Assembly (NCBI GenBank): GCA_002269645.1
Contig: NIVC01000449.1
Coordinates: forward strand, 124,001 to 188,000
Source: Macrostomum lignano
Lineage: Eukaryota
Reading direction: 5' to 3'
Length of the DNA: 64,000 nt
The notes under the pieces were generated by a model. The model did no database searches. It saw nothing but the letters and a program-made list of their open reading frames with translations, and was not told the DNA's origin. Position numbers and translations under genes: made by a program. Shown piece after piece: positions 23,201 through 48,549 of this stretch; within the stretch, counting starts at the first letter, position 1, and each line of letters starts with the position of its first letter.

Positions 23201-23495
23201 GTTCGAACTGGACTCTCTAGAGGTGTTGGACACCTATGCGGAGGATGAACTAAACGAACCCGAGTCTATGGTTATTGATAATGACTCTCTTGAGCCTACG
23301 AATAATCCAACTACCGATTCGCCTGGCAACTTGGAGAGTCGTCTGCGCGACCTGATGGGCATCAATGTTGTCAGGCAGCCGCAGCACCAACAGCAGCCGA
23401 TGAGGCACAGAGCTCAGTACCAGCAGCAGCAGCAGCAGCAGCAGCATGCTCTGTCTGAGGATGACCATCGCATTCACGATTTGTTGGGCATTTGA
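20232..23495 (+). CDS. PSIP1/HDGFL2: PWWP + LEDGF/IBD domain protein (LEDGF/p75-HRP2 family), exons 20232-20721 and 21418-23495, ~855 aa
   Basis: PWWP: PGDKIFAKVKGYPHWPCRI..YPIFFYGTHE. IBD: LRMMNSDIKQSL..DFSRCLAVLTEMQSL..TVRKCRKYKLSEKVRNAAQKLFEKFANLF. Donor TTTG|GTGAGG and acceptor CCACAG|TT are phase 1 and join in frame. The first few codons could come from an upstream exon. Confidence 0.9.
20810..21150. repeat. 24-bp minisatellite in the PWWP-gene intron
   Basis: Unit ~TGTTTCTTAGAAATTGCCCTCTGA. Confidence 0.9.
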
Positions 23496-25148: not shown

Positions 25149-26070
25149 TGAGGTCATAGCGATCAACTGAAGTCAGCTATGGGTCATCATCAGGTGTCAA
25201 TGAGGTCATAGCGATCAACTGAAGTCAGCTATGGGTCATCATCAGCCGTCAATGAGGTCATAGCGATCAACTGAAGTCAGGTATGTGTCATCAGCCGTCA
25301 ATGAGGTCATAGCGATCAACTGAAGTCAGCTATGGGTCATTATCAGGTGTCAATGAGGTCATAGCGATCAACTGAAGTCAGCTATGGGTCATCATCAGGT
25401 GTCAATGAGGTCATAGCGATCAACTGAAGTCAGCTATGGGTCATCAGCCGTCAATGAGGTCATAGCGATCAAATGAAGTCAACTATGGGTCATCATCAGG
25501 TGTCAGTTGAGGTCATAGCGATCAAATGAAGTCAACTATGGGTCATCATCAGGTGTCAATGAGGTCATAGCGATTAACTGAAGTCAGCTATGGGTCATCA
25601 TCAGGTGTCAATGAGGTCATAGCGATCAACTGAAGTCAGCTATGGGTCATCATCAGGTGTCAATGAGGTCATAGTGATCAACTGAAGTCAGCTATGGGTC
25701 ATCATCGGGTGTAAATGAGGTCATAGTGATCAACTGAAGTCAACTATGGGTCATCATCGGGTGTAAATGAGGTCATAGTGATCAACTGAAGTCAGCTATG
25801 GGTCATCATCAGGTGTCAATGAGGTCATAGCGATCAACTGAAGTCAGCTATGGGTCATCATCAGGTGTCAATGAGGTCATAGCGATCAACTGAAGTCAGC
25901 TATGGGTCATCATCAGGTGTCAATGAGGTCATAGCGATCAACTGAAGTCAACTATGGGTCATCATCAGGTGTCAATGAGGTCATAGCGATCAACTGAAGT
26001 CAACTATGGGTCATCATCAGGTGTCAATGAGGTCATAGCGATTAACTGAAGTCTGCTATGGGTCATCGTC
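25149..26070. repeat. 52-bp tandem repeat, ~18 copies
   Basis: Unit TGAGGTCATAGCGATCAACTGAAGTCAGCTATGGGTCATCATCAGGTGTCAA; starts at 25149 and 25201. Confidence 0.95.
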
Positions 26071-26799
26071 TAGGTTTGAGGATGAAGTCATCAGGTCAAC
26101 TGAGGTCAACAACAACGATAAGGGTAAAGTGAAGTCAGCCAATTGTCATATATGCATGTTACTGATGAGGTCAATTGATCCTACTGCAAAAGGATAAAAC
26201 TGGAATTTCCACATACGCAGTCACGTACACAGGCAGCCCCTTTAGTTGCTAGAATAATATACATAAAGAATCCTCGCTAAATTTAGGATATTTATATTGT
26301 TTTTACAACTACAGCTGCAGTGTGTCTTTGAATATAGCTGCACATTAGACAGGTGACCTTTTTTTTCGCGAGTGTGTGTGAAACCCAGATTTGCTTCATC
26401 AGAACACACAGAGGTGGATCAGTCAGACTCCTGATCTGGGAAACTTTCGTTTTCATGCAAAACAGAAAGTCCCTATATACAGATTCATTTGATGCTGTAC
26501 AATTACCCGCTCGCTCTACTAAAAAATGACAATTCTGCCTACAATTGGATTGACAATTGGGCTCTCGTAATATTATGTAGTTTTATGTATGCAGCATGCA
26601 GAGCCATTCCAGTTCTGTACTAATTGAGAGCGTGTCCTAGCTAGTTAACTTGATGAAGATTTATTAATACTGGGGTATCCACTAGTAATACTGGCCATGC
26701 CGACGCCTGGGCTGTGGACTTTATTTTTGAATAATTGGCTCTGCTGCGCCTGCTTTTAGTGTAAATCATTAGACTGCTGTTCGCTTGTGTGCTTTTCTC

Positions 26800-26975
26800 C
26801 TCTCCGCTCCTCTCTTCTCTCCTCTTCTCTCCTTCTCTCCTCCCCTCTTTTCTTCTTTCCTCTCCTCTATATTCTGATCTCCTCTCCTCTCCTCTATTCT
26901 CATCGATCCTCTCCTCTCCTCTATTCTCATCTCCTCTCTTTTCTCTTCTCTCTTCTTTTATCCTTTCCTCCTCTC
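26800..26975. repeat. CT-rich low-complexity tract
   Basis: (CTCCT/CTCTT)n-like sequence. Confidence 0.8.
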
Positions 26976-27509
26976 TGTTCCGTAACTTCCCTACTATTTA
27001 TCCATCTCGCTTATTTCCAAATCCCAAAAATATATAATCAATTTTCAAAAGCAAAATAAAAGCTTCGAGTACAAGTGCTTTTAATTTTTTAAGTACTCAG
27101 CCTCCGGTGTACATTTAAATGCACGCTCGTACTTTAATATTGTAAAAAGACTAACAACCTAAAGTTCGAGATGGCGATAAAAAATCTCAAACTTTTTTAT
27201 CATACAGCACTGCACTGCCATGTGCTTCATGGAAAAGAGCAGTTTAAAACCCTGCAGTTCAGTGCTGGAGTTTAAAAGTCAATATAATATTAGTTCGTCC
27301 TATACCAGCAAACAAACTACTGCATTTAACCATTTGTAAACAGCCTTGCAGTGCGCTGCGGTAATAGTCGCTCTTATCATTTAAAAAAAAATACTGCATG
27401 TTAACTTTTGAGCTCAGAAGCTCCTGGCAATAGCAGGGCAACTCAGACCCATTCTCATGGCTCTGTTATCATGGTCTAATCCCACTTCCTTGTCCATGAC
27501 CCCTCTACC

Positions 27510-30500
27510 ATCTCTATATGATCCCTCTCTCCTATTTCTATGATCCCTCTGTCCTATCTCTATGATCCCTCTGTCCTATCTCTTTGATCCCTCTGTCTTA
27601 TCTCTATGACCCCTCTCTCCCATCTCTATGACCTCTCTCTCCCATCTCTATGACCGCTCTCTCACATCTCTATGACCCCTCTCTCCTATCTCTATGACCC
27701 CTCTCTCCCATCTCTATGACCCCTCTCTCACATCTCTATGACCCCTCTCTCCCATCTCTATGACCCCTCTCTCCCATCTCTATGACCCCTCTCTCACATC
27801 TCTATGACCCCTCTCTCACATCTCTATGACCCCTCTCTCACATCTCTATGACCCCTCTCTCACATCTCTATGACCCCTCTCTCCCATCTCTATGACCCCT
27901 CTCTCGCATCTCTATGACTCCTCTCTCCCATCTCTATGACCCCTCTCTCACATCTCTATGACCCCTCTCTCACATCTCTATGACCCCTCTCTCCCATCTC
28001 TATGACCCCTCTCTCCCATCTCTATGACCCCTCTCTCCCATCTCTATGACCCCTTTCTCCCATCTCTATGACCCCTCTCTCTCCCATCTCTATGACCCCT
28101 CTCTCCCATCTCTATGACTCCTCTCTCCCATCTCTATGACCCCTCTCTCACATCTCTATGACCCCTCTCTCACATCTCTATGACCCCTCTCTCACATCTC
28201 TATGACCCCTCTCTCCAATCTCTATGACCCCTCTCTCACATCTCTATGACCCCTCTCTCACATCTCTATGACCCCTCTCTCCCATCTCTATGACTCCTCT
28301 CTCCCATCTCTATGACCCATCTCTCACGTCTCTATGACCCCTCTCTCCCATCTCTATGACCCCTCTCTCTCCCATCTCTATGACCCCTCTCTCCCATCTC
28401 TATGACCTCTCTCCCATCTCTATGACCCCTCCCTCACATCTCTATGACCCCTTTCTCCCATCTCTATGACCCCTCTCTCCCATCTCTATGACCCCTCTCT
28501 CCCATCTCTATGACCCCTCTCTCACATCTCTATGACCCCTCTCTCACATCTCTATGACCCCTCTCTCACATCTCTATGACCCCTCTCTCCCATCTCTATG
28601 ACCCCTCTCTCGCATCTCTATGACTCCTCTCTCCCATCTCTATGACCCCTCTCTCACATCTCTATGACCCCTCTCTCACATCTCTATGACCCCTCTCTCC
28701 CATCTCTATGACCCCTCTCTCCCATCTCTATGACCCCTCTCTCCCATCTCTATGACCCCTCTCTCCCATCTCTATGACCCCTCTCTCCCATCTCTATGAC
28801 CCCTCTCTCCCATCTCTATGACTCCTCTCTCCCATCTCTATGACCCCTCTCTCCCATCTCTATGACCCCTCTCTCACATCTCTATGACCCCTCTCTCCCA
28901 TCTCTATGACCCCTCTCTCACATCTCTATGACCCCTCTCTCCCATCTCTATGACCCCTCTCTCCCATCTCTATGACCCCTCTCTCCCATCTCTATGACCC
29001 CTCTCTCACATCTCTACGACCCCTCTCTCTCCCATCTCTATGACCCCTCTCTCCCATCTCTATGACTCCTCTCTCCCATCTCTATGACCCCTCTCTCACA
29101 TCTCTATGACCCCTCTCTCACATCTCTATGACCCCTCTCTCACATCTCTATGACCCCTCTCTCCCATCTCTATGACCCCTCTCTCACATCTCTATGACCC
29201 CTCTCTCACATCTCTACGACCCCTCTCTCTCCCATCTCTATGACTCCTCTCTCCCATTTCTATGACCCATCTCTCACATCTCTATGACCCATCTCTCACA
29301 TCTCTATGACTCCTCTCTCACATCTCTATGACCCATCTCTCACATCTCTATGACCCCTCTCTCACATCTCTATGACCCCTCTCTCCCATCTCTATGACCC
29401 CTCTCTCTCCCATCTCTATGACCCCTCTCTCCCATCTCTATGACCTCTCTCCCATCTCTATGACCCCTCTCTCACATCTCTATGACCCCTCTCTCCCATC
29501 TCTATGACCCCTCTCTCACATCTCTATGACCCCTCTCTCACATCTCTATGACCCCTCTCTCACATCTCTATGACCCCTCTCTCCCATCTCTATGACCCCT
29601 CTCTCACATCTCTATGACCCCTCTCTCCCATCTCTATGACCCCTCTCTCACATCTCTATGACCCCTCTCTCACATCTCTATGACCCCTCTCTCACATCTC
29701 TATGACCCCTCTCTCACATCTCTATGACCTCTCTCTCCCATCTCTATGACCCCTCTCTCCCATCTCTATGACCCCTCTCTCACATCTCTATGACCCCTCT
29801 CTCACATCTCTATGACCCCTCTCTCCCATCTCTATGACCCCTCTCTCACATCTCTATGACCCCTCTCTCCCATCTCTATGACCCCTCTCTCACATCTCTA
29901 TGACCCCTCTCTCCCATCTCTATGACCCCTCTCTCACATCTCTCTGACCCCTCTCTCCCATTTCTATGACCCCTCTCTCACATCTCTATGACCCCTCTCT
30001 CCCATCTCTATGACTCCTCTCTCCCATCTCTATGACCCCTCTCTCTCCCATCTCTATGACCCCTCTCTCCCATCTCTATGACCCCTCTCTCCCGTCTCTA
30101 TGACCCCTCTCTCCCATCTCCATGACCCCTCTCTCACATCTCTATGACCCCTCTCTCCCATTTCTATGACCCCTCTCTCACATCTCTATGACCCCTCTCT
30201 CCCATCTCTATGACTCCTCTCTCCCATCTCTATGACCCCTCTCTCCCATCTCTATGACCCCTCTCTCCCATCTCTATGACCCCTCTCTCACATTTCTATG
30301 ACCCCTCTCTCTCTCCCATCTCTATGATCCCTCTCTCTCCCATCTCTATGACCCCTCTCTCACATCTCTATGACCCCTCTCTCCCATCTCTATGACCCCT
30401 CTCTCACATCTCTATGACCCCTCTCTCCAATCTCTATGACCCCTTTCTCTCCCATCTACATGACTCCTCTCTCCTATCTACATGACCCCTCTCTCACATT

Positions 30501-34403: not shown

Positions 34404-36681
34404 CCCAACCCTCAGGGTGTGCCCATGTGTAATACTCTACCTGGTGGCAGTGATCCCCCCAGTCTGGATAGCGGAGTTCGACCTGGTGATAATCTATCGC
34501 GTGCTCAACGGCTCCGAAGCCACGGACGCTTCGGAGGACGCAGCCTTCTTGATCGGCCACGGCCGACGAAATTTGTCGGCTCATCCGGAAAAGGTGTGTT
34601 CAGTGAGCTACTGTTAGTAGCGCTGTTGGGATGTTTTCAAAGTTTCATAGTGAGAGACGAAGAAACGGCAAGATTGTGTCTAATATTTCCATAGATTTTT
34701 AAGCGCTCTGGTGTAAGACTAAGAAAATGAAGTTAAAGAAATTTGGGGTGACACTAAGATTTTGAGACACTGATATTTTTAGATACTGGGCTTTTGAAAC
34801 ACTGAGAGTTTGAGACACTGAAAGAGACTTAAGACACTGAGATAGAGTGACATTTGAGACACTGAGTGAGATTTTGAGACACTGAGTGAGATTTTGAGAC
34901 ACTGAGTGAGGTTTTGAGACACTGAGTAAGATTTTGAGACACTGAGTGAGATTTTGAGACACTGAGTGAGATTTTGAGACACTGAGTGAGATTTTGAGAC
35001 ACTGAGTGAGATTTTGAGACACTGAGTGAGATTTTGAGACACTGAGTGAGCTTTTGAGACACCGACTGAGATTTTGAGACAGTGAGTGAGATTTTGAGAT
35101 ACTGAGACAGAGTGAGACTTTGAGACAGTGAAACAAAGTGAGACTTTGAGTAAAGCTGATTTTCATCACAAACGTTTAACATGTATATTGCACAGTCCCT
35201 CCTGGGCATCGACACTGGGCTCAGCTTCAAAGAGGAGACCCGCATTCTGATGGAGGAGATCCTGCTGCTCGTGCTCATCATTGGCCGCTGGATTCTGCCC
35301 CGCCAGCAGATCTCCAAGGAGCAGAAGTCCGCCCTGCTCATTGGGTACATCGGCATGTCTGCTGACATTCTGGAGCTCTATGAATACTTCAAGGATGACA
35401 GGTAATAATAGAAAGCGGACTGGGGGAGATTGCAGAGCAGCTGGTATGCACACCTGGGTTCGAGTCTGGTCTCTATGTTTGAGCCCAAAAGGCACACAGA
35501 GAGTGTACATTCCTGACGATTAGAAAGTCAGGGGACATGCCTAAGTACTTAGAGGGGGGCGCCAAAGCTACTGCAGAGAGGGGGCGCCAAAGCTACTGCA
35601 GAGGGGGTTGGCGCCGAAGCTACTGCAGAGAGGGGGCGCAAAAGCTACTGCAGAGAGAGAAGCCAAAGCTACTGCAGAGGTGGGGGACTCCAAAGCTACT
35701 GCAGAGGGGGACGCCAAAGCTACTAAAGAGGGGGGGCGCCAAAACTACTGCAGAGGGGGGCGCAAAAGCTACTGCAGAGGGGGACGCCAAAGCTACTAAA
35801 GAGGGGGGGCGCCAAAGCTACTGCAGAGGTGGGGGGCGCAAAAGCTACTGTAGAGGGGGACGCCAAAGCTACTGCAGAGGGGGACGCCAAAGCTACTAAA
35901 GAGGGGGGGCGCCAAAGCTACTGCAGAGGGGGGCGCCAAAGCTACTACAGAGGGGGGCGCCAAAGCTACTGCAGAGGGGGCGCCAAAGCTACTAAAGAGG
36001 GGGGTGCCAAAGCTACTGCAGAGGGGGGCGCCAAAGCTACTGCAGAGGGGGGAGGCGCCAAAGCTACTGCAGAGGGGGGCGTCAAAGCTACTGCAGAGGG
36101 GGGCGTCAAAGCTACTGCAGAGGAGGCGCCAAAGCTACTGCAGAGGGGGCGCCAAAGCTACTGCAAATGGGGGCGCCAAAGCTACTGCAGAGAAGGGTGG
36201 ATCAAAGCTACTACAATGGTCAGCAGGGAATCGAACCCCTGTAAACCCACCAACCCACAGGCTGAAGACCAACCAGACCATCATCACCATCCTTCTATCC
36301 GTGTGGACCAGCGCCATGCTGCAGTTCGTTTTCGTCTTCACTGCCAGACGGGTTGTCGGTGGAAATCCCAGCAGCTTCGGCAGCCTCCTGGTCAACACGG
36401 ACATGTGGGCCATTGTCTGCAACCTGCTGCTGCAGGACGCACCGTTTCTGGCTGTCCGATTCTACCTGCTGGTGAAGTACGCGATTGTGAGCGAGACTAG
36501 CGTGTTCTTTCTGGTGAAGAACAGCCTGCTCACTGTGCTCATCCTGCACCGGATTCACTCGCTCATTGTCGAATGGAGAATTGAACGGTGCCAGAATCGC
36601 CAGCTTCATCACCCGGAGGCTGGGGTTATATCTGCTCCTGGGAATGCAGATTCGAATGGACCGCCTGCGGTGCCAGTCTGA
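30967..36681 (+). CDS. TMEM26: TMEM26-family multipass membrane protein, copy A; exons 30967-31175, 34416-34593, 35196-35401, 36261-36681 (337 aa)
   Basis: Matches TMEM26 motifs: [14 protein letters not shown](KW), [65 protein letters not shown] junctions in phases 2/0/2 give 1014 nt in frame. Confidence 0.88.
31250..31918. repeat. 17-bp purine/G-rich minisatellite in TMEM26-A intron 1
   Basis: Unit CGG(G/A)GAGGGTAGAGAAT. Confidence 0.93.
32211..34402. repeat. Three tandem ~720-bp higher-order units (200-bp unique block + ~500-bp (TATC)n)
   Basis: Block AAAGCTTTCTCTGCAGCC...GTGTAACTATC starts at 32211, 32921 and 33659; TATC interruptions recur in each unit. Confidence 0.95.
34745..35150. 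repeat. 20-bp minisatellite (TMEM26-A intron 2)
   Basis: Unit GAGATTTTGAGACACTGAGT. Confidence 0.93.
35555..36210. repeat. 21-22-bp minisatellite (TMEM26-A intron 3)
   Basis: Unit GCCAAAGCTACTGCAGAGGGG(G)GC. Confidence 0.93.
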
Positions 36682-36774
36682 ATGGTGGTCTGGGAAATCA
36701 AAGAATGACTGAGTGATTGAGAATTGCACAGCTTGTGCTGATATTGCAGTTGCTTAGGAATTACTGCGGCTCTT

Positions 36775-37445
36775 TGATGCCCCTTCATTCCCTCTCTCTC
36801 TGTTCCTTAATTTCCTATCTTCTCTGTCCCTTCATTCCCTCTCTCTGTTCCTTCATTCCCTCTCTCTCTGTCCCTTCATTCCTCTCTCTGTCCCTCCATT
36901 GTTTCTCTCTCTGTTCCTTCATTCCCTCTCTCTCTGTCCCTTCATTCCCTCTCTCTCTGTCCCTTCATTCCCTCTCTCTCTGTCCCTTCATTCCCTCTCT
37001 CTCTGTCCCTTCATTCCCTCTCTCTCTGTCCCTTCATTCCCTCTCTCTGTTCCTTCATTCCCTCTCTCTCTGTCCCTTCATTCCTCTCTGTGTCCCTCCA
37101 TTGTTTCTCTCTCTGTTCCTTCATTCCCTCTCTCTCTTTCCCTTCATTCCCTCTCTCTCTGTCCCTTCATTCCCTCTCTCTCTGTCCCTTCATTCCCTCT
37201 CTCTCTGTCCCTTCATTCCCTCTCTCTCTGTCCCTTCATTCCCTCTCTCTCTGTTCCTTCATTCCCTCTCTCTCTCTCTGTCCCTTCATTCCCTCTCTCT
37301 CTGTCCCTTCATTCCCTCTCTCTCTGTCCCTTCATTCCCTCTCTCTCTGTTCCTTCATTCCCTCTCTCTCTCTGTCCCTTCATTCCCTCTCTCTCTGTCC
37401 CTTCATTCCCTCTCTCTCTGTCCCTTCATTCCCTCTCTCTCTGTC
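36775..37445. repeat. 23-bp pyrimidine minisatellite 3' of TMEM26-A
   Basis: Unit CCTTCATTCCCTCTCTCTCTGTC. Confidence 0.93.
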
Positions 37446-38199
37446 ATTTCTTCATCTCAATCCCCCTTCATCTCCCATCAATTCCTCCGTTCATCTCTCT
37501 GCTTTTTACTTGACTTATTAAAGTCGTGGTTCTGTACTTATTTATACTTTAATCTTTTATACTTTTCTCGAAAAGACAATTTGCTCGTAAGATGCAGTAA
37601 GCGTGTTTCTCTTTTGTCTGTCCTACTCAAACTTTAATGTTTTTTTAAAGAAAGCCAGAAATAAAACTAAAACAATTTTAAACCGAAAGCATTGGATTTA
37701 CAACGTCAAGGCGAATTCTTGGCACAGCTGCTGTCAACACTTGCTGTATTGGGGTTGAAATTTCTCACTTTATTCTTCTGGATTTGCGGTGAATTGTTTG
37801 CTGGGATGGCAGCTGCATGCGCTGGGGGAGTCTTGGGGATCGGTTTTTTATTGCCATCTGGACTCGTCACCTCGCCGGCTGCTCATAAAGCGCAGGCAAG
37901 CGTGCGGAGGTGGGGCTGCGGGGGTGCTTTGGACTCCGGGGAGGAATCCAAGCTCAGAAATCCATCGCCGCGCATGGACTGCTAGAGTGATTATAGTTAG
38001 CATCTGGATTGGAAACATCTACTTCTGAATTGGAACTAAGTGCTATTCATTTCAATGGGAATTAATTTTATTAGCTAAACTGATAAGTCGATAAATAAAC
38101 CCTACAAAGTGTAAAGAAAAAACACTGATAACATGGAAACCATGAGAACAATTTAACAAGAAAAAATCATTAAAAACAAAAATCGGGAAAAGATGAGAA

Positions 38200-38335
38200 C
38201 AGCGAAACTACAAAGTATGAGAACCATGAGAACAACTTTGAGAAACATGAGAACAACTATAAGAACCATGAGAACAACTATGAGAACCATTAGAACAGCT
38301 TTGAGAACCATGAGAAAAACATAACTGCATCGATC
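38200..38335. repeat. Short degenerate 21-bp array (expanded in copy B)
   Basis: ATGAGAACAACT(A/T)TGAGAA(A/C)C-like units. Confidence 0.75.
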
Positions 38336-38740
38336 TATGTTACCCATGAGGACAAAATAAATTAAGAGAATTATGAGAACAAGAGAATCATGAACAGAAC
38401 CAATGCTCAAATCTGTTGTGTATTGAACAATGAAGTTAGTTACTATAGAATACAAAATATATGGCAAAATATATTAATTTCATTAACAATTTTTTCCACA
38501 ACTCTGCTTCATCCATCATGCCGCTCTCCAGATTCTGCAACTTTGGTTCGCCATGGCCCGCGGCCCGGCGGTCTTATAACAGAAAGAAAAAAGTAATTTC
38601 TATATTTTTCAATCCTCAATATTCAAGGGCAACAAAAGCAACGGGAATTGAAGGAGTTGTAAAACTGCAAGATGACTGGGGTGGGGGCGTCAGGATCCAC
38701 TTCTTTAGTGCGTCAGGATCCAATCCAGCCCCAAATTAAT

Positions 38741-38812
38741 GTGGCTGCACTTGGAATCGAGCCTGGGTCGCGGCACACCAGAGCAGCTGCGCTACCGCTG
38801 GGCTACGGCCCC
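38741..38812 (-). pseudogene. tRNA-derived sequence (SINE head or tRNA pseudogene)
   Basis: Minus strand GGGGCCGTAGCCCAGCGGTAG...CCAGGCTCGATTCCAAG has A-box and B-box-like motifs, but acceptor, anticodon and T stems do not pair. Confidence 0.6.
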
Positions 38813-38816
38813 CACA

Positions 38817-38968
38817 TTTCCCACGTTAAATGTTCCCACGTTAAATGTTCCCACGTTAAATGTTCCCACGTTAAATGTTCCCACGTTAAATGTTCCCACG
38901 TTAAATGTTCCCACGTTAAATGTTCCCACGTTAAATGTTCCCACGTTAAATGTTAAATGTTCCCACGT
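38817..38968. repeat. 15-bp tandem repeat, ~10 copies
   Basis: Unit CCCACGTTAAATGTT. Confidence 0.95.
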
Positions 38969-39080
38969 TTAGTTCAACTAGAAATTTCGCTCTAAAAATA
39001 GTCGCAATTGTTTGTCCTTGCGGCTCGTAGCAAAGATTCTATTGGGTCTATGGTTGCGTGGCCCAGCCAACGGGAGAAGA

Positions 39081-39157
39081 CCCTACCCATAGAATTCTAG
39101 ATCTAGAATTCTATGCCCTACCGAGGGCAGAGAAGAGAAGTTCATTAGCTATAAAAA
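39081..39157 (+). promoter_or_regulatory. Caspase proximal promoter: 28-bp palindrome between 7-bp direct repeats, then TATA box
   Basis: CCCTACC (39081-87), CATAGAATTCTAGATCTAGAATTCTATG (39088-39115), CCCTACC (39116-22); TATAAAAA at 39150-39157; CCGCCATGG start context at 39220. Confidence 0.65.
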
Positions 39158-39219
39158 GAAGAGCTTTGGGCGGGTAGAGAAGTTTTAGCATAGTTAGCTA
39201 GCATCCGATGTTATCCGCC

Positions 39220-41617
39220 ATGGCTGAGGCTTGCGATGCCCCCCGAAGATCGACTGCTCCCACAAATATTCCAAATCAAAGCGAAGACGAAGGTAGGCTT
39301 TTGATTTTTTACTGAAGCCTTTCCAAGTTTACCTTTAATCTGTTAATATAGTTGGGGTAGTAAATGAATCTTTACTCTATTCGAACTATTTTCAAGCTAA
39401 ATTCAAATGACCCTTTGACTGAGTGGCACCTGCAAACTTAAGATCCGTACAGAATCAGTAATTCTAACTTGAAATCTGCCGTGATGGGTATACGCTCGTA
39501 ATTATCAGTTGTAACTATAATAAAATTAACATATTTTGGACATTGCGCTTTATCCTGTATGGCAAATTTTCATGCAAAAAAACGATTTTTGGTCGGTGCA
39601 TTGCTTTGTTTGAGTGACTGAAAAATCAACAGCTAAAGTGCTGCTTCGTGCCTTTTCTGGTCATTCTCCCTATGACATTCAATCAGCAAGTGCAAGTGGT
39701 CCAGAAGAAAGCACTTCTATGCTGGTACGGGTAGCAGTATACGAGGGTACAGCAGATACAAAATGGTATATTGTCGCGTAACTATTACAATATATATATG
39801 CTACTATATGCTATATACATGGTACTGGTTTGGAGTAGCCGGCTCAAAGGTCAAACAAACTGAGCAGTGCACATGCACTACAAGTTATATGTACATGTGT
39901 ATGTGAGTTCATCAGTAGTTTTGAAAAAAATTATGTTCTAAATTTTGTTTAAATTTCAGTCGAACAAAATTCACGACCGCAAACAACGCCAACGCCGAAA
40001 CCCGTCCAGCTGCCTTCATTCAGTGGACAATGCAGGGCTGTTATATTCAACCAGGCATACAATCAGGAAGTCAACTGCTGCTTAGAAGTTCGCGACTATG
40101 AGCGCTTCTTGGACCGCTGCGGATTCATTGTCAACTATGTACCATCGACCGATTTTAGCGACATAAAAAATGGAATCGAGGGCGTAGCGAAGGACGCCAA
40201 ACAGCTGGTTGTGGTCGTACTGCTTGAGTCTGACGAACCCGCCGACCTTGACGAAATTGTCAAACTGCTTTTGGCTGCAAATGACTCAACGCAGAAGCTG
40301 CTTATATTCTGCAGAATCTCCAACACGGACGCCGAAGAGAAAGCCGATTGCGTTAAGCTGATGAGGCCAGACGAGTGTCGAGGGAAGCTGCGCAACATGG
40401 TGCTCATGAGCATCACCGTGAAGATGCGAGATGAAGTGAGGACCTTCCTGCAGCTGCTCGCTGATCTAAAAAAGAGAAAGTGGCACAGCAGGGGTCTCGG
40501 CGAGTTGATTCAGTACGAAATCGAGAGCGAAGTTTTCGATAAGTTCAGGTTGAAGACGCAGAATGGCTTGACTGGCGAGTTCATCCAGCCACGGCTGCCG
40601 GTGAAAATGCTGAAGGACAGGGAGGAGTTCGCCAGAATTATTGGCGACGGATCGCACCTGAAGCAGCTGGACGCCGAAACAGTCGAGAGACTGAAGACTG
40701 ATCCCAATCCGATTGACGATCTGGTTTACTACATTGGAAATCGTGCTACAAAAAAAGCTCTGATAATTCATAACGTAAGTTTCGTGCTTCCAACCTTGAA
40801 TCGACCCGAGAGCTACATGGATTTTAAGAACCTGCGTCACGTGCTGACTCTTATGCAGTTCAGTGTGACAGAAATGGTTAACCTGACAGCTGAGCAGATG
40901 CGGGAGGCGGTGAGAAACTTTGCCAACGATGAGAGCCATGGAGACGCTTGCGTCCTGGCTATCATGTCGCACGGTAGCCTCGGCATTATCTGCGGCACGG
41001 ACTACAGAAGAGGGGAAAAATTGGGCATCGTTGAAGAGTTTGAAATACTCCAACTGATGTCCAGAGGCGCCGGTGTCTGGGCCAAGCCCAGACTGGTTCT
41101 CATTCAAGCCTGTCGGATCGATTCGAGCGAGGCAGAAAAACTGGCGGCGAACTCGGAGAGAGTCTGCGCGATGATGACGGAGATGGCCATCCAGGTGGGC
41201 ATTCACCAAGGCAATCCTGCCAGCGGATCTGAGCCGCCGCCTGAGCAGAGCGGGCTGATCGTGGCCCATTCGACATCGCCTGGGGACTTCGCTTTTCGAA
41301 GTAGTTACGGCAGTCGCTTCATTTTAGCCCTGTGCGCAACCTTTTACGAGTTCGCCCATAAAGAGGATCTGGTCTCCATGCTCACCAGGATCAACTTCGC
41401 CATGGTTCGCGGATTTAAACAGCCTGAACTGAATGGAGAAGTTCTGTCACTACAACTGCCATGCTGGACAGTGCAGACGCATAAGAAGTTTTTCCTTGTT
41501 AGTACGCAGAGTCTATTTGAAGGGCCGGCAGAAGCGATGGCGGATCGGGTGGATCAACAGCAGCCCAAGTCAAGCCGAATTCCTCTCTCCGGAGAGGTGT
41601 CGGAGAATCAATTATAG
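39220..41617 (+). CDS. Caspase (peptidase C14A) with an N-terminal degenerate caspase-like domain; exons 39220-39292 and 39960-41617 (576 aa)
   Basis: C-terminal domain: KKALIIHN, NRPESYMD, IMSHG (His 40970-72), LIQACRI (Cys 41111-13), HSTSPGDFAFR..GSRFILAL, KKFF. Donor GAAG|GTAGG and acceptor TTTCAG|TC are phase 1 and in frame with the 502-aa ORF. Confidence 0.9.
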
Positions 41618-41911
41618 AAAAAAACTGGTTGAATACAGTACAGATACGAGTATTTATGCTCCAGTTTCACATACTTGCTGTTTCAAGACCCTATAATCAC
41701 TATAATTATTTGCAGTCTTCTCTAAAGTTTTATTACAATACGAGAGCATCCTCTTGAGTTCGAACTTGCATAAAATGGCGATTAAAATCATGTCAATTTT
41801 CAGGACGAAAACAGGCTCTCAGATTTTGCGTGTAATACTCGCCACCTATTCAAAAGTGTGTGACAACAATCAGCCGGTATTACGAGTCTTCTCTATTATT
41901 ACGGCTAGATT

Positions 41912-42723
<812 letters not shown>

Positions 42724-42982
42724 CCTTTTCAAGATGCTTAGTCATACACTTCTATGCTTTAAATCTGTTTTTCTATAGCACCTAACATCTTTATTTTTGT
42801 GCAAGGCTTCAACCGCAAAAACTTTAACCAATCAGCGTGCTTCAATTCACTTTTTTAACTAATTATACGTACACATCTTTACTCATCACTGCTCAGTGCA
42901 CCCCCAAAAGTCACATATATATATTGAAATTATGTTAAAATAACTTCACAGCCAATATATTTGTTTTTAAACCCGAATAAAT

Positions 42983-43023
42983 AAACCCTGACAAAGGCCC
43001 AGTCCAGGCCGAAATATCGGTTT
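42983..43023 (+). ncRNA. Minimal type-I hammerhead-ribozyme-like motif (Penelope/retrozyme type), probably inactive
   Basis: AAACC-CTGACAA-A-GGCC(CAGTCCA)GGCC-GAAA-TA-TC-GGTTT. Stem I AAACC/GGTTT, stem II GGCC/GGCC, short palindromic stem III. The core has A at G8. Confidence 0.55.
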
Positions 43024-43112
43024 CTGAATATTCGACAACTAACGTTCTTCAATATTTCCGTGTGTGTGGTTTGCAGTTTGAAACTGCCTTTTGCATATCT
43101 ATCTATCTATCC

Positions 43113-43175
<63 letters not shown>

Positions 43176-43228
43176 CATCTATCTATCTATCTATCTATCT
43201 ATCATCTATCTATCTACCCAACCCTCAG

Positions 43229-46200
43229 GGTGTGCCCATGTGTAATACTCTACCTGGCTGCAGTGATCCCCCCAGTATGGATAGCGGAGTTCGACCTGGT
43301 GATAATCTATCGCATTCTCAATGGCTCCGAAGCCACGGACGCTTCAGAGGACGCAGCCTTCTTGATCGGCCACGGCCGACGAAATTTATCTGCTCATCCG
43401 GAAAAGGTGCGTTCAGTGAGTTACTGTTAGTAGCGCTGTTGGGATGTTTTCAAAGTTTCATAGTGAGAGACGAAGAAACGGCAAGATTGTGTCTAATATT
43501 TTCGTCGATTTTTAAGCGCTCTGGTGTAAGACTAAGAAAATGAAGTTAAAGAAATTTGGGCTGACACGAAGATTTTGAGACACTGATATTTTTAGACACT
43601 GGGCTTTTGAAACACTGAGATAGAGTGACATTTGAGACACTGAGTGAGATTTTTTGACAGCGGGTGAGATTTTGAGACACTGAGTGAGATTCTGAGACAC
43701 TGAGTGAGCTTTTGAGACAGACTGGTTTTTAGACACTAAAACAAAGTGTGATTTTGAGACACTGATATTTTTAGATACTGGGCTTTTGAAACACTGAGAT
43801 AGAGTGACATTTGAGACACTGAGTGAGATTTCGAGACCCTGAGTGAGATTTTGAGACACTGAGTGAGATTTTGAGACACTGAGTGAGATTTTGAGATTTT
43901 GAGTGAGATTTTAAGACACCGACTGAGATTTTGAGACACTAACACAAAGTGTGATTTTGAGACACTGAGTGAGATTTTGAGACACTGAGTAAGATTTTGA
44001 GACACTGAGTGAGATTTTGAGACACTGAGTAAGATTTTGAGACACTGAGTGAGATTTTGAGACACTGAGTGAGATTTTGAGACACTGAGTGAGATTTTGA
44101 GACACTGATATTTTTAGATACTGGGCTTTTGAAACACTGAGATAGAGTGACATTTGAGACACTGAGTAAGATTTTGAGATTTTGAGTGAGATTTTAAGAC
44201 ACCGACTGAGATTTTCAGACACTAACACAAAGTGTGATTTTGAGACACTGAGTGAGATTTTGAGACACCGAGTAAGATTTTGAGACACTGAGTGAGATTT
44301 TGAGACACTAACACAAAGTGTGATTTTGAGACACTGAGTGAGATTTTGAGACACTGAGTAAGATTTTGAGACACTGAGTGAGATTTTGAGACACTGAGTG
44401 AGATTTTGAGACACTGAGTAAGATTTTGAGTCATTGAGTGAGATTTTGAGACACTGAGTAAGATTTTGAGACACGGAGTGAGATTTTGAGACACTGAGTG
44501 AGATTTTGAGACACTGAGTAAGATTTTGAGACACTGAGCGAGCTTTTGAGACACCGACTGAGATTTTGAGACACTAAAACAAAGTGTGATTTTGAGACAC
44601 TGAGTGAGATTTTGAGACACTGAGTAAGGTTTTGAGACTCTGAGTGAGATTTTGAGACACTGAGTGAGATTTTGAGACACTTAGTAAGCTTTTGAGACAC
44701 CGACTGAGATTTTGAGACACTAACACAAAGTATGATTTTGAGACACTGAGTGAGATTTTGAGACACTGAGTAAGATTTTGAGACACTGAGTGAGATTTTG
44801 AGACACTGAGTGAGATTTTGAGACACTGAGTGAGATTTTGAGACACGGAGTGAGATTTTGAGACACTGAGCGAGCTTTTGAGACACCGATTGAGATTTTG
44901 AGCCACTAAAACAAAGTGTGATTTTGAGACACTGAGTGAGATTTCGAGACACTGAGTGAGATTTTGAGACACTGAGTAAGATTTTGAGACACTGAGCGAG
45001 CTTTTGAGACACCGACTGAGATTTTGAGGCACTAAAACAAAGTGTGATTTTGAGACACTGAGTGAGATTTTGAGACACTTAGTTAGATTTTGAGTCATTG
45101 AGTGAGATTTTGAGACACTGAGTGAGATTTTGAGACACTTAGTAAGATTTTTAGTCATTGAGTGAGATTTTGAGACACTGAGTGAGATTTTGAGACACTG
45201 AGTGAGCTTTTGAGACACCGACTGAGATTTTGAGACACTGAGTGAGATTTTGAGACACTGAGTGAGATTTTGAGATACTGAGACAGAGTGAGACTTTGAG
45301 ACAGTGAAACAAAGTGAGACTTTGAGTAAAGCTGATTTTCATCACAAACGTTTAACATGTATATTGCACAGTCCCTCCTGGGCATCGACACTGGGCTCAG
45401 CTTCAAAGAGGAGACCCGCATTCTGATGGAGGAGATCCTTCTGCTCGTGCTCATCATTGGCCGCTGGATATTGCCCCGCCAGCAGATCTCCAAGGAGCAG
45501 AAGTCCGCCCTGCTCATTGGGTACATCGGCATGTCTGCTGACATTCTCGAGCTCTACGAATACTTCAAGGATGACAGGTAACAATAGAAAGCGGACTGGG
45601 GGAGGTGGCAGAGCAGCTGGTATGCACACCTGGGTTCGAGTCTGGTCTCAATGTTTGAGCCCAAAAAGGCTCATAGAGAGTGTACATTCCTGACGATTAG
45701 AAAGTAAGAGGCATACCTAAGTGCTTAGAGGTCACTCCAAAGCTACTGCAGAGGGGGGCGCCAAAGCTACTGCAGAGGGGGCGCCAAAGCTACTGCAGAG
45801 GGGGGCTCCAAAGCTACTTCAGAGGGAGTGCCAAAGCTACTGCAGAGGGGGGCGTCAAAGCTACTGCAGAGGGGGCGCCAAAGCTACTGCAGAGGGGGGC
45901 GCCAAAGCTACTGCAGAGGGGGGCGCCAAAGCTACTACAGAGGGGGGCGCCAAAGCTACTGCAGAGGGGGCGCCAAAGCTACTAAAGAGGGGGGTGCCAA
46001 AGCTACTGCAGAGGGGGGCGCCAAAGCTACTGCAGAGGGGGGAGGCGCCAAAGCTACTGCAGAGGGGGGCGTCAAAGCTACTGCAGAGGGGGGCGTCAAA
46101 GCTACTGCAGAGGAGGCGCCAAAGCTACTGCAGAGGGGGCGCCAAAGCTACTGCAGAGCGGGCGACAAAGCTACTGCAGAGGTTGCGCAAAAGCTACTGC

Positions 46201-46693
46201 AGAGGAGGGTGGATCAAAGCTACTACAATGGTCAGCAGGGAATCGAACCCCTGTAAACCAACCATCCCACAGGCTGAAGACCAACCAGACCATCATCACC
46301 ATCCTTCTATCCGTGTGGACCAGCGCCATGCTGCAGTTCGTTTTCGTCTTCACTGCCAGACGGGTTGTCGGTGGAAATCCCAGCAGCTTCGGCAGCCTCC
46401 TGGTCAACACGGACATGTGGGCCATTGTCTGCAACCTGCTGCTGCAGGATGCACCGTTTCTGGCTGTCCGATTCTACCTGCTGGTGAAGTACGCGATTGT
46501 GAGCGAGACTAGCGTGTTCTTTCTGGTGAAGAACAGCCTGCTCACTGTGCTCATCCTGCACCGGATTCACTCGCTCATTGTCGAATGGAGAATTGAATGG
46601 TGCCAGAATCGCCAGCTCCATCACCCGGAGGCTGGAGTTATATCTGCTCCTGGGAATGCAGACTCGAATGGACCGCCTGCGGTGCCAGTCTGA
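43229..46693 (+). CDS. TMEM26: TMEM26-like copy B, exons 2-4 only (43229-43406, 45372-45577, 46273-46693); no exon 1 of its own
   Basis: Exon lengths are identical to copy A (178/206/421 nt), splice sites intact, no stops or frameshifts. No exon-1 homolog between 41617 and 43229. Confidence 0.75.
43555..45310. repeat. 20-bp minisatellite (copy B intron 2, ~4x longer than in copy A)
   Basis: Unit GAGATTTTGAGACACTGAGT. Confidence 0.95.
45735..46225. repeat. 21-22-bp minisatellite (copy B intron 3)
   Basis: Unit GCCAAAGCTACTGCAGAGGGG(G)GC. Confidence 0.93.
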
Positions 46694-46774
46694 ACGGCTG
46701 TCCGGGGAACTTAAACTGCTTGCACTGATATTGCAGTTGCTTGGGAATTACTGCGGCTCTTTGATCTGTCCCGT

Positions 46775-47770
<996 letters not shown>

Positions 47771-48549
47771 CTTCTTTCCCTTTCTCTCTGTCGTTTCTTC
47801 ATCTTCATTCTTCATTTTTCATTTTTCATTTTTATTTCTTCATCCCAAACTTCAGAGAGAGTTCTTTCTTCTTTCATCTCCCATCAATTCCTCCTGTTCA
47901 TCTCTCTCTGCTTTTTACTTGACTTATTAAAGTCGTGGTTCTGTACTTATTTATACTTTAATCTTTTATACTTTTCTCGAAAAGACAATTTGCTCGTAAG
48001 ATGCAGTAAGCGTGTTTCTCTTTTGTCTGTCCTACTCAAACTTTAATATTTTTTTCTTTAAAGAAAACCAGAAATAAAACTAAAACAATTTTAAACCGAA
48101 AGCATTGGATTTACAACGTCAAGGCGAATTCTTGGCACAGCTGCTGTCAACACTTGCTGTATGGGATTGAAATTTCCCACTTTATTCCTCTGGATTTGCG
48201 GTGCATTGTGGGCGGGGATGGCTAGCGGCTGGGGGAGTCTTGGGGATCGGTTTTTTATTGCCTTCTGGACTCGGCACCTCGTTGGCGGCTCATAAAGCGC
48301 AGGCAAGCGTGCGGAGGTGGGGCTGTGCGGGGGGTGCTTTTGGACTCGGGGAAGGAATCCAAGTTCAGAAATCCATCGCCGTGCATGGACTGCTAAAATA
48401 GTTATAGCTAGAATCTGGATTGGAAACTTTTATTGAAATACTTCTGGATTAGAACTAATTACTATTGATTTGAATGAGGATTAAACATTATTAGTTTTAT
48501 ACCTGAATAGTTTGTAAATAAACCATGTAAAGTGTAAAGAAAAGGCGCT

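What the first reader, a model, noticed from the sequence alone, without database searches (positions are those of the whole stretch)
40030..41500. Single-chain tandem caspase: degenerate caspase domain fused to an active one
Instead of a CARD/DED prodomain, the N-terminal ~190 aa align element by element with the C-terminal caspase: RAVIFNQ/KALIIHN; YERFLDRCGFIV/LRHVLTLMQFSV; QLVVVVLLES/ACVLAIMSHG (His lost); KLLIFCRIS/RLVLIQACRID (CRI kept); NMVLMSIT/GLIVAHST; RTFLQLLADL/SRFILALCATF; GLGELIQ/DLVSMLT. Known: caspases are activated by dimerisation, and cFLIP-L, a pseudo-caspase, modulates caspase-8 by heterodimerising. Inference: this protein may carry its own cFLIP-like partner, making a pre-dimerised or auto-regulated caspase. 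The QACRI active-site variant is also atypical.
Basis: partly seen in the sequence, partly recalled or inferred. Interest (0 to 1): 0.8.

Follow-up and report, generated by a model that had tools for sequence, protein, structure and literature searches.

The report
Flatworm caspase with probable pseudo-caspase prodomain
A flatworm (Macrostomum lignano) gene encodes an apparently active caspase preceded by a ~200-residue domain that is probably, but not provably here, a very degenerate second caspase domain, a design already known from corals, mussels and mammals.

Summary
The window is Macrostomum lignano DNA. The finding lies in a two-exon gene (39208-39292, 39960-41617, + strand) for a 580-aa protein, BOX15_Mlig012807g1.

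**C-terminal half.** It is a genuine caspase (Pfam PF00656, E 1.2e-33). It keeps the His366/Cys413 dyad and the Asp-pocket residues R310, Q411 and R475. The QACRI motif is real, but two other M. lignano caspases share it.

**N-terminal ~230 aa.** No homologue was detected in any library. Every local test of similarity to caspases is at chance level, including comparison with the protein's own C-domain. AlphaFold2 without an alignment failed (pLDDT 34-37).

A model-global threading onto a 118-caspase profile gave a different result:
- It beats 1000 of 1000 shuffles (z 4.4).
- It beats 532 of 533 real E. coli protein windows.
- It places Cys146-Arg-Ile on the catalytic Cys-Arg-Ile position.
- The best-matching single caspase is an M. 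lignano paralogue.

I put a degenerate caspase-like N-domain at about 0.6; the fold is not verified. The in-cis cFLIP-like role is inference with published precedent: coral caspase-X, mammalian caspase-16 and mussel double-CASc caspases.

Verdict: new member of a known kind, moderate interest.

The parts
39150..39157 (+). TATAAAAA, a possible TATA box about 50 nt upstream of the ATG
   Evidence: Read directly. Inference only; no transcript data.
39208..39292 (+). Exon 1: ATG plus 28 codons (MLSAMAEACDAPRRSTAPTNIPNQSEDE) and the first base of codon 29, followed by a GT donor
   Evidence: Matches the N-terminus of P0001. Conserved, with its donor, in the paralogous locus L002.
39293..39959 (+). 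Intron (GT...AG, preceded by a T-rich tract)
   Evidence: About 72% column identity with many indels between the two gene copies, against about 98.5% for exon 2.
39960..41617 (+). Exon 2: the rest of the 580-aa protein, through the TAG stop at 41615-41617
40025..40630 (+). N-domain, residues G51-F252: an orphan alpha/beta domain and candidate degenerate (pseudo-)caspase domain. It lacks the catalytic His and the Asp-pocket residues.
   Evidence: No homologue found. Model-global threading on the caspase HMM and its traceback. The beta-alpha-beta-alpha-beta-alpha-beta pattern appears in both low-confidence AF2 models.
40310..40318 (+). Cys146-Arg147-Ile148 of the N-domain, aligned with the catalytic Cys-Arg-(Gly/Ile) position
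   Evidence: Traceback. Ile at this position occurs only in M. lignano caspases.
40631..40750 (+). Inter-domain linker, residues 253-292, with Asp residues that could be caspase cleavage sites (IIGD258/G, KQLD266/A, PIDD282/L)
   Evidence: That these sites are cleaved is inference.
40751..41494 (+). C-terminal caspase domain (Peptidase_C14), residues 293-540
   Evidence: Pfam PF00656, E 1.2e-33. CED-3 and caspase-3 structures at E 1e-19 to 1e-15. 134.7 bits on the caspase HMM built here.
40970..40972 (+). Catalytic His366 (in MSHGS)
   Evidence: Invariant column in 122 caspases.
41105..41119 (+). QACRI pentapeptide (residues 411-415) with catalytic Cys413 at 41111-41113
41120..41254 (+). Intersubunit linker, residues 416-460, with no Asp apart from D416

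Best explanation
The gene encodes a long-prodomain caspase specific to Macrostomum.

**C-terminal half (residues 293-540).** It is a bona fide caspase and probably an active, Asp-specific one. The His366/Cys413 dyad and the P1 pocket residues R310, Q411 and R475 are kept. Several otherwise near-invariant residues are changed: G312E, G415I, S473A and W481R.

**N-terminal domain (residues 51-252).** It is most likely a very degenerate caspase-fold domain, that is, a pseudo-caspase. It keeps the order and spacing of the caspase core elements beta1 to alpha5, more weakly beta6, and a Cys-Arg-Ile at the end of beta4. It has lost the His loop, the Arg/Gln Asp-binding residues and most of the substrate-binding loops.

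**Mechanism (inferred, by analogy with coral caspase-X, caspase-16 and FLIP(L)/caspase-8).** The dead domain would act in cis as a partner or regulator of the live domain. It would either hold the live domain in check until the Asp-rich inter-domain linker is cut, or supply the dimer-like contact that caspases need. The intersubunit linker has no Asp, which suggests activation does not depend on the usual Asp-directed cleavage between the large and small subunits.
For: **Shown here.**
- Gene model and identity.
- Caspase domain and catalytic residues.
- Model-global fit of the N-domain to a 118-caspase HMM: -34.9 bits against -68.3 +/- 7.6 for shuffles, z 4.4, 0 of 1000. Against 10-aa block shuffles, z 4.2, 0 of 1000.
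- Both halves contribute: p20 part z 3.6, p10 part z 2.6.
- Two disjoint half-profiles built without the M. lignano sequences give z 3.6 and 3.9.
- Among 533 windows from 184 real E. coli proteins, only one reaches the N-domain's score, a Q/R-rich repeat. The best globular decoy has z 3.0.
- Other alpha/beta profiles fit poorly: ABC ATPase z -0.25, plant TIR z 0.85, deep CheY profile z 2.2-2.3 with 22 of 533 decoys better.
- On that fixed alignment, mean identity to caspases is 17.2%, against 12.6 +/- 1.5 for shuffles (0 of 300 as high). The best-matching single caspase is the M. lignano paralogue P0062, rank 1 of 120, which happens in 1% of shuffles.
- Ile after Cys-Arg is found only in M. 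lignano caspases.
- The N-domain is constrained coding sequence. Between the two gene copies pN/pS is 0.28, similar to the caspase half (0.22). Indels are multiples of three. Exon 2 is about 98.5% identical while the intron is about 72%.

**Precedent.**
- Caspase-X: removing the dead domain increases killing (PMC4715348).
- Caspase-16 (PMC12198278).
- Mytilus caspases with two CASc domains (PMC10967218).
Against: - No local similarity test reaches significance.
- Pfam, PDB, NCBIfam and PADLOC give nothing for the N-domain even at E <= 10.
- phmmer against 1.84 billion representative proteins finds only the protein itself.
- The protein's own C-domain ranks 93rd of 120 in similarity to the N-domain, so there is no trace of a recent internal duplication.
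- The fold is unverified. AF2 gave pLDDT 33.8 and 37.2, and Foldseek returned only generic, non-significant alpha/beta hits.
- The threading statistic also rewards shared alpha/beta architecture. On a CheY profile, unrelated Rossmann-like decoys reach z 4-7.
- The segment aligned to beta6, the strand that forms the caspase dimer interface, is polar (KMLKDREEF). AF2 draws it as a helix, which weakens the 'pre-dimerised' idea.
- The pN/pS value for the N-domain alone rests on six differences (P 0.12).
Confidence: 0.6

Rival explanations
1. The N-terminal domain is an unrelated, lineage-specific alpha/beta domain of flavodoxin-like, TIR-like, Rossmann-like or novel fold. It would serve as a recruitment or sensor prodomain, in the way that kinase, TIR, ankyrin, ROC or Z-binding prodomains replace CARD/DED in other lophotrochozoan caspases. 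Its resemblance to caspases would be only the generic beta-alpha-beta pattern.
For: - All local similarity tests are null.
- An equally plausible-looking by-eye alignment can be drawn to plant TIR domains (LDEIVKLL against LDELVKIL). It scores no worse than the N-versus-C alignment in the same tests.
- The N-domain also threads onto a CheY profile better than chance (z 2.3, 11 of 500).
- Unrelated alpha/beta decoys can reach z 4-7 on such a profile.
- Unusual non-death-fold prodomains are common in lophotrochozoan caspases, including a kinase-like one in M. lignano and TIR domains in an annelid (PMC11463336).
Against: - On the caspase profile the N-domain beats every globular decoy (0 of 532). 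It is ordinary on the ABC, TIR and CheY profiles.
- Both the p20-like and the p10-like halves match, and in the right order.
- Cys-Arg-Ile falls exactly on the active-site position, and the best single match is an M. lignano caspase.
- Pfam TIR and other models give no hit.
Confidence: 0.32
2. The N-terminal 250 residues are not part of the functional protein. They would be a mis-annotated 5' region, with translation really starting near the caspase domain, or a decaying remnant.
For: - No homologue exists anywhere.
- The paralogue's 5' end is visibly mis-annotated.
Against: - The frame is open and continuous with the caspase domain within a single exon.
- Between the two gene copies the N part has fewer differences than the caspase part. 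pN/pS is 0.28, the only indel is a multiple of three, and the intron next to it is far more diverged.
- Exon 1, with its start codon and donor site, is conserved in both copies.
- The sequence has normal globular composition and a regular strand/helix pattern.
Confidence: 0.04

Closest known systems
Acropora millepora caspase-X (Xa-Xd): pseudo-CASc plus CASc in one chain (PMC4715348)
   Same: - A dead N-terminal caspase-like domain is followed by a typical active one.
- There is no CARD or DED.
- The authors modelled a cFLIP/caspase-8-like intramolecular pair.
   Different: - In caspase-X the first domain is recognisable as CASc by ordinary domain searches and lacks both the His and the Cys.
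- Here the first domain is invisible to Pfam, keeps a Cys-Arg-Ile, and is shorter because the active-site loops are deleted.
- The lineage is different (Cnidaria versus Platyhelminthes), so the origin is probably independent.
Mammalian caspase-16 (PMC12198278)
   Same: The prodomain is predicted to fold like a caspase domain. The catalytic site is kept only in the C-terminal domain. An intramolecular FLIP(L)-like pairing has been proposed.
   Different: - Caspase-16's N-domain shows detectable internal sequence similarity and arose by exon duplication.
- Here both domains lie in one exon, and no N/C similarity is detectable.
cFLIP-L (CFLAR) / procaspase-8 heterodimer
   Same: A catalytically dead caspase-like domain partners a live caspase and tunes its activity.
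   Different: - cFLIP is a separate polypeptide with tandem DEDs, recruited at the DISC.
- This protein has no DEDs.
- According to PMC11463336, platyhelminths lack FADD.
Double-CASc caspases of bivalves (Mytilus coruscus, PMC10967218)
   Same: Lophotrochozoan caspases with two caspase domains in one chain.
   Different: Both of their domains are called by SMART/ScanProsite. No functional data exist, and orthology with this protein is not shown.
M. lignano short caspases BOX15_Mlig022708g1 and BOX15_Mlig006913g1 (P0059, P0062)
   Same: - They are the only other sequences of the 122 with the QACRI active-site variant.
- P0062 is the caspase most similar to the N-domain on the profile-derived alignment.
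   Different: - They have a single caspase domain with a short (~75 aa) prodomain.
- They are only ~29% identical to this protein's C-domain.
- Their intersubunit linker is rich in Asp, whereas this protein's has none.

Membership tests
Caspases (MEROPS C14A; Pfam Peptidase_C14): C-terminal domain | Family profile match above the curated threshold | tested here: met
   PF00656: 117.2 bits against a cut-off of 21.4, E 1.2e-33. CED-3 and caspase-3 structures at E 9e-20 to 1e-15.
Caspases (MEROPS C14A; Pfam Peptidase_C14): C-terminal domain | Catalytic His-Cys dyad | tested here: met
   H366 and C413 fall in columns invariant across 122 sequences.
Caspases (MEROPS C14A; Pfam Peptidase_C14): C-terminal domain | P1-Asp pocket (equivalents of Arg179, Gln283 and Arg341) | tested here: met
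   R310, Q411 and R475 are conserved.
Caspases (MEROPS C14A; Pfam Peptidase_C14): C-terminal domain | Canonical QACxG pentapeptide and other near-invariant residues (RxG, SWR, GSWF) | tested here: not met
   The protein has QACRI (Gly in 118 of 120 homologues), G312E, S473A and W481R. This marks a divergent member. It does not exclude membership.
Caspases (MEROPS C14A; Pfam Peptidase_C14): C-terminal domain | Asp-directed proteolytic activity | not testable with these tools
   Needs recombinant enzyme and substrates.
Single-chain pseudo-caspase + caspase (caspase-X / caspase-16 type) | N-terminal domain recognisable as a caspase domain by sequence | tested here: inconclusive
Not met by Pfam, PDB, local HMM or hhalign.
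Single-chain pseudo-caspase + caspase (caspase-X / caspase-16 type) | N-terminal domain adopts the caspase fold | tested here: inconclusive
   AF2 pLDDT was 33.8 and 37.2. Foldseek hits were not significant, and the control on the true caspase domain also failed.
Single-chain pseudo-caspase + caspase (caspase-X / caspase-16 type) | Catalytic residues lost in the first domain and kept in the second | tested here: met
   In the first domain the His, the Asp-pocket Arg/Gln/Arg and the SHG loop are absent, though a Cys remains at the aligned position. The second domain is intact.
Single-chain pseudo-caspase + caspase (caspase-X / caspase-16 type) | Intramolecular domain pairing that regulates activity | not testable with these tools
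   Needs a structure and truncation assays. The beta6-equivalent segment is poorly conserved.
CARD- or DED-prodomain initiator caspases | Death-fold prodomain | tested here: not met
   No CARD or DED hit at E <= 10. Low-confidence AF2 models, read only for local secondary structure, draw the N-domain as alternating strands and helices rather than an all-helical death fold.
TIR-domain prodomain caspases (reported in an annelid, PMC11463336) | TIR domain at the N-terminus | tested here: not met
   No Pfam TIR hit. Pairwise comparison with RPV1, ROQ1 and RUN1 TIR domains gives z <= 0.8. Threading on a 3-sequence TIR profile gives z 0.85, and the reversed sequence scores better. A deep TIR profile could not be built.

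The most novel reading that the evidence does not exclude
Flatworms would have independently evolved a single-chain pseudo-caspase/caspase in which the dead domain has diverged beyond ordinary sequence detection but still carries a Cys-Arg-Ile. The live domain has no Asp in its intersubunit linker. Such a protein would be a 'pre-paired' caspase switched on or off by cutting the Asp-rich inter-domain linker rather than by adaptor-driven dimerisation. This would fit a phylum reported to lack FADD and, outside triclads, DED caspases. It would mean the tandem design arose repeatedly and is under-counted by domain searches.
Probability: 0.2. Interest if true: 0.6.

Novelty: new member of a known kind. 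Interest (0 to 1): 0.42.

Why it matters
**If the N-domain is a pseudo-caspase.** This would be a further, probably independent, case of a caspase carrying its own dead partner, after corals, bivalves and mammals. It would also be the most diverged case. That would suggest such tandem caspases are missed by routine domain annotation. A recent survey of lophotrochozoan caspases (PMC11463336) listed only a kinase-prodomain oddity for M. lignano.

M. lignano supports RNAi and transgenesis. The regulatory logic (does the dead domain inhibit or activate in cis?) could therefore be tested in vivo, which is not possible for human CASP16P or easy in corals.

**If it is not a pseudo-caspase.** The gene is still a caspase with a new orphan prodomain, which is of narrower interest.

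Tried and rejected
- **Pairwise N versus C similarity.** BLASTP, Smith-Waterman, semi-global and chain-of-blocks alignments with shuffles were all at chance level.
- **Homologue searches for the N-domain.** The word-indexed search found nothing and did not even return the parent protein. phmmer over 1.84 billion representatives found only the protein itself. The metagenome scan found nothing. No alignment could therefore be built.
- **Family libraries.** Pfam, PDB, NCBIfam and PADLOC at E <= 10 gave nothing.
- **Local profile tests.** hmmsearch --max and hhalign gave P 0.12-0.2. phmmer of the N-domain against all 120 caspases gave a best E of 0.64.
- **Structure prediction.** AF2 on the full length and on the N-domain alone gave pLDDT 33.8 and 37.2. 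Foldseek on these models was uninformative and failed on the known caspase half. I chose not to feed AF2 an alignment that pairs caspases with the N-domain, because that would be circular.
- **hhalign -glob.** It allows free end overlaps and returned 21-column end matches, so it was unusable as a global test.
- **TIR lead.** It came from my own by-eye reading (LDEIVKLL against plant LDELVKIL). It was not significant and was rejected. A deep bacterial TIR control could not be obtained.
- **Recent internal duplication.** Rejected, because the protein's own C-domain ranks 93rd of 120.
- **dN/dS on the N-domain alone.** There are too few differences to be decisive.
Full report
**What is there.**

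The window is genomic DNA of the flatworm Macrostomum lignano. The exon-2 product is 100% identical to NCBI protein BOX15_Mlig012807g1 (P0001, 580 aa), encoded on contig NIVC01000449.1 of assembly GCA_002269645.1.

The gene has two exons on the + strand:
- Exon 1 is 39208-39292: the ATG, 28 codons and one base, then a GT donor.
- The intron is 39293-39959.
- Exon 2 is 39960-41617, ending in TAG.

They therefore belong to one polypeptide if the gene is expressed.

A second copy of the gene (P0002, on contig NIVC01001547.1) is about 98.5% identical over exon 2, with only in-frame indels. The intron is about 72% identical, with many indels. Between the copies pN/pS is 0.26 overall (P 0.006), 0.22 for the caspase half and 0.28 for the N-terminal half. 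The last value rests on only six differences (P 0.12). The N-terminal region is thus conserved coding sequence, not a decaying leader.

**The C-terminal half is a real caspase.**

- Residues 293-539 match Pfam Peptidase_C14 at E 1.2e-33.
- They match solved CED-3 and caspase-3 structures at E 9e-20 to 1e-15.
- In an alignment with 120 caspases, the catalytic His366 and Cys413 and the Asp-pocket residues R310, Q411 and R475 sit in invariant columns.

The domain is nevertheless divergent. It has QACRI instead of QACRG, G312E in the R-x-G motif, S473A, and W481R in GSWF. However, the only other sequences with Ile at that position are two other M. lignano caspases, P0059 and P0062. It is a lineage trait.

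The intersubunit linker (residues 416-460) contains no Asp apart from D416. The inter-domain linker has six, for example IIGD258/G, KQLD266/A and PIDD282/L.

**The N-terminal half by ordinary methods: nothing.**

Residues ~45-276 produce:
- no Pfam, PDB, NCBIfam or PADLOC match even at E <= 10;
- no relative in 1.84 billion representative proteins apart from the protein itself;
- nothing in a metagenome scan.

Comparison with the protein's own C-domain is at chance level:
- BLASTP best E is 0.28, for the 16-residue LLIFCRIS/LIQACRID stretch.
- Smith-Waterman z is 0.9.
- A chain-of-blocks alignment with length-independent gap cost gives z 0.15-1.4.

Against a profile of 118 caspase domains:
- Local scoring gives -1.2 bits, with 156 of 1000 shuffles as good or better.
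- hhalign gives P 0.12.

As a caution against by-eye alignment, I could draw an equally persuasive 'element by element' alignment to plant TIR domains. It scored no worse in the same tests.

Structure prediction failed for lack of an alignment. pLDDT was 33.8 for the full length and 37.2 for the N-domain alone. Foldseek on the full-length model did not recognise even the genuine caspase half, so its silence on the N-domain carries no weight.

**A whole-domain test gives a signal.**

No single segment is similar enough for local statistics. I therefore wrote a Viterbi alignment that forces the whole caspase core of the HMM (beta1 to beta6) to be traversed, while leaving the sequence ends free.

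- The N-domain scores -34.9 bits. Shuffles score -68.3 +/- 7.6, giving z 4.4 with 0 of 1000 as good.
- Against 10-residue block shuffles, which keep strand- and helix-like segments but permute their order, z is 4.2 with 0 of 1000 as good.
- The reversed sequence scores -78.9 bits.
- The p20-like part (z 3.6) and the p10-like part (z 2.6) both contribute.
- Two profiles built from disjoint halves of the caspase set, without the M. lignano sequences, give z 3.6 and 3.9.

As a null made of real proteins, I threaded 533 windows of 232 residues from 184 E. coli K-12 proteins, many of them alpha/beta. Only one window reaches the N-domain's raw score or z. It is a Q/R-rich low-complexity repeat of YacH. 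The best globular decoy has z 3.0.

The N-domain does not fit other alpha/beta profiles well:
- ABC ATPase: z -0.25.
- Plant TIR: z 0.85.
- A 59-sequence CheY-like profile: z 2.2-2.3, with 22 of 533 decoys doing better.

The traceback pairs the N-domain with the caspase consensus as follows:

| N-domain | Caspase consensus |
|---|---|
| GQCrAVIFNQ | GlaLiiNn |
| YERFLDRCGFIV | lkklfkkLgfkv |
| LVVVVL | fvvviL |
| DLDEIVKLL | veelvslf |
| QKLLIF--CRIS | KPKlffiQACrGe |
| TFLQLLADLKK | swFiqalcevlkk |
| GLGELIQyEIESEVFDKF | edllsilt.kVnkkvaekf |

The SHG loop is deleted after the third block. The beta5 block is shifted by four residues.

**Two further hints of homology rather than mere architecture.**

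First, on this profile-derived alignment, which was not optimised against any single sequence, the N-domain is on average 17.2% identical to caspase domains. Shuffles give 12.6 +/- 1.5%, with 0 of 300 as high. The single most similar caspase of 120 is the M. lignano paralogue P0062, with P0059 eighth. P0062 ranks first in 1% of shuffles, and both fall in the top eight in 0.7%.

Second, the residue after the aligned Cys-Arg is Ile. That is the M. lignano-specific state, and the profile does not reward it.

**Limits.**

- The protein's own C-domain ranks only 93rd of 120.
- The threading statistic also rewards shared alpha/beta architecture. On the CheY profile, unrelated Rossmann-like decoys reach z 4-7. 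A z of 4.4 therefore says 'caspase-like order and spacing of elements, more than any of 532 other real windows'. It does not say 'proven homologue'.
- The segment aligned to beta6, the strand that makes the caspase dimer interface, is polar and weakly matched.
- The fold remains unverified.

I put the pseudo-caspase reading at about 0.6. An unrelated orphan alpha/beta prodomain is at about 0.3. An annotation artefact is at a few per cent.

**How it probably works (inference).**

The live C-domain should cut after Asp. The N-domain has lost the His, the Asp pocket and the substrate loops, so it cannot be a protease.

There are precedents. In coral caspase-X, deleting the dead domain increased killing of HeLa cells, and a cFLIP/caspase-8-like intramolecular pair was modelled (PMC4715348). 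The same pairing was proposed for caspase-16 (PMC12198278). By analogy, the N-domain most likely regulates the C-domain in cis.

The intersubunit linker is Asp-free and the inter-domain linker is Asp-rich. This fits a model in which the switch is separation of the two domains rather than classical large/small subunit cleavage. That model is untested.

**Novelty.**

Single-chain caspases with a dead first and a live second caspase domain are already described:
- in Acropora (2016);
- in mammals, as caspase-16 (2025);
- as 'two CASc' caspases in Mytilus (PMC10967218) and other invertebrates (PMC12122919).

A 2024 survey of lophotrochozoan caspases reported only a kinase-like prodomain for M. lignano and no other unexpected prodomain in platyhelminths (PMC11463336). 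If confirmed, this would be a new, unusually diverged member of a known kind, in a phylum where it has not been noted. Interest is moderate.

Noticed in passing
window 41912-42723 and 43096-43216: A long (TATC)n microsatellite, about 200 and 30 copies, lies immediately 3' of the caspase gene. It produces the spurious 'SIYLSIYL' ORFs in the ORF list.
   Followed up: partly
window 43623-45282; 38818-38954; 38216-38320; 37000-37445: Several tandem-repeat arrays flank the gene: a 20-bp satellite (~81 copies), a perfect 15-bp repeat (9 copies) about 250 bp upstream of exon 1, and 21-bp and 23-bp arrays.
   Followed up: no
window 20232-20894 and 21474-23495 (+): ORFs with a PWWP domain and a LEDGF/integrase-binding domain. 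Together they look like exons of a PSIP1/HDGF-related gene.
   Followed up: no
window 14199-14999 (-): Fragment of an LTR-retrotransposon pol gene: the RNase H-like domain of reverse transcriptase plus the integrase zinc-binding domain.
   Followed up: no
L001 (window ~36200-44600), minus strand: The public annotation has a minus-strand gene (262-aa product) spanning the whole locus. The caspase gene would therefore be nested inside one of its introns.
   Followed up: no
L002:3000-3900 (paralogous locus on NIVC01001547.1): The paralogue P0002 is annotated as partial, with a 5' end that reads through the intron. Yet a conserved exon 1 (MAEACDAP...GE) with a GT donor is present upstream, as in the window. 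Its gene model is probably wrong.
   Followed up: partly
window 26001-30000 and 46001-48000: Strongly strand-asymmetric composition: GC skew down to -0.82, and AT skew -0.35 to -0.44. This suggests further low-complexity or satellite tracts.
   Followed up: no
tool behaviour: The word-indexed protein search with the 248-aa N-domain returned no hit at E <= 10, not even the parent protein P0001 that contains it. Negative results from that tool on short divergent queries should be read with care.
   Followed up: partly
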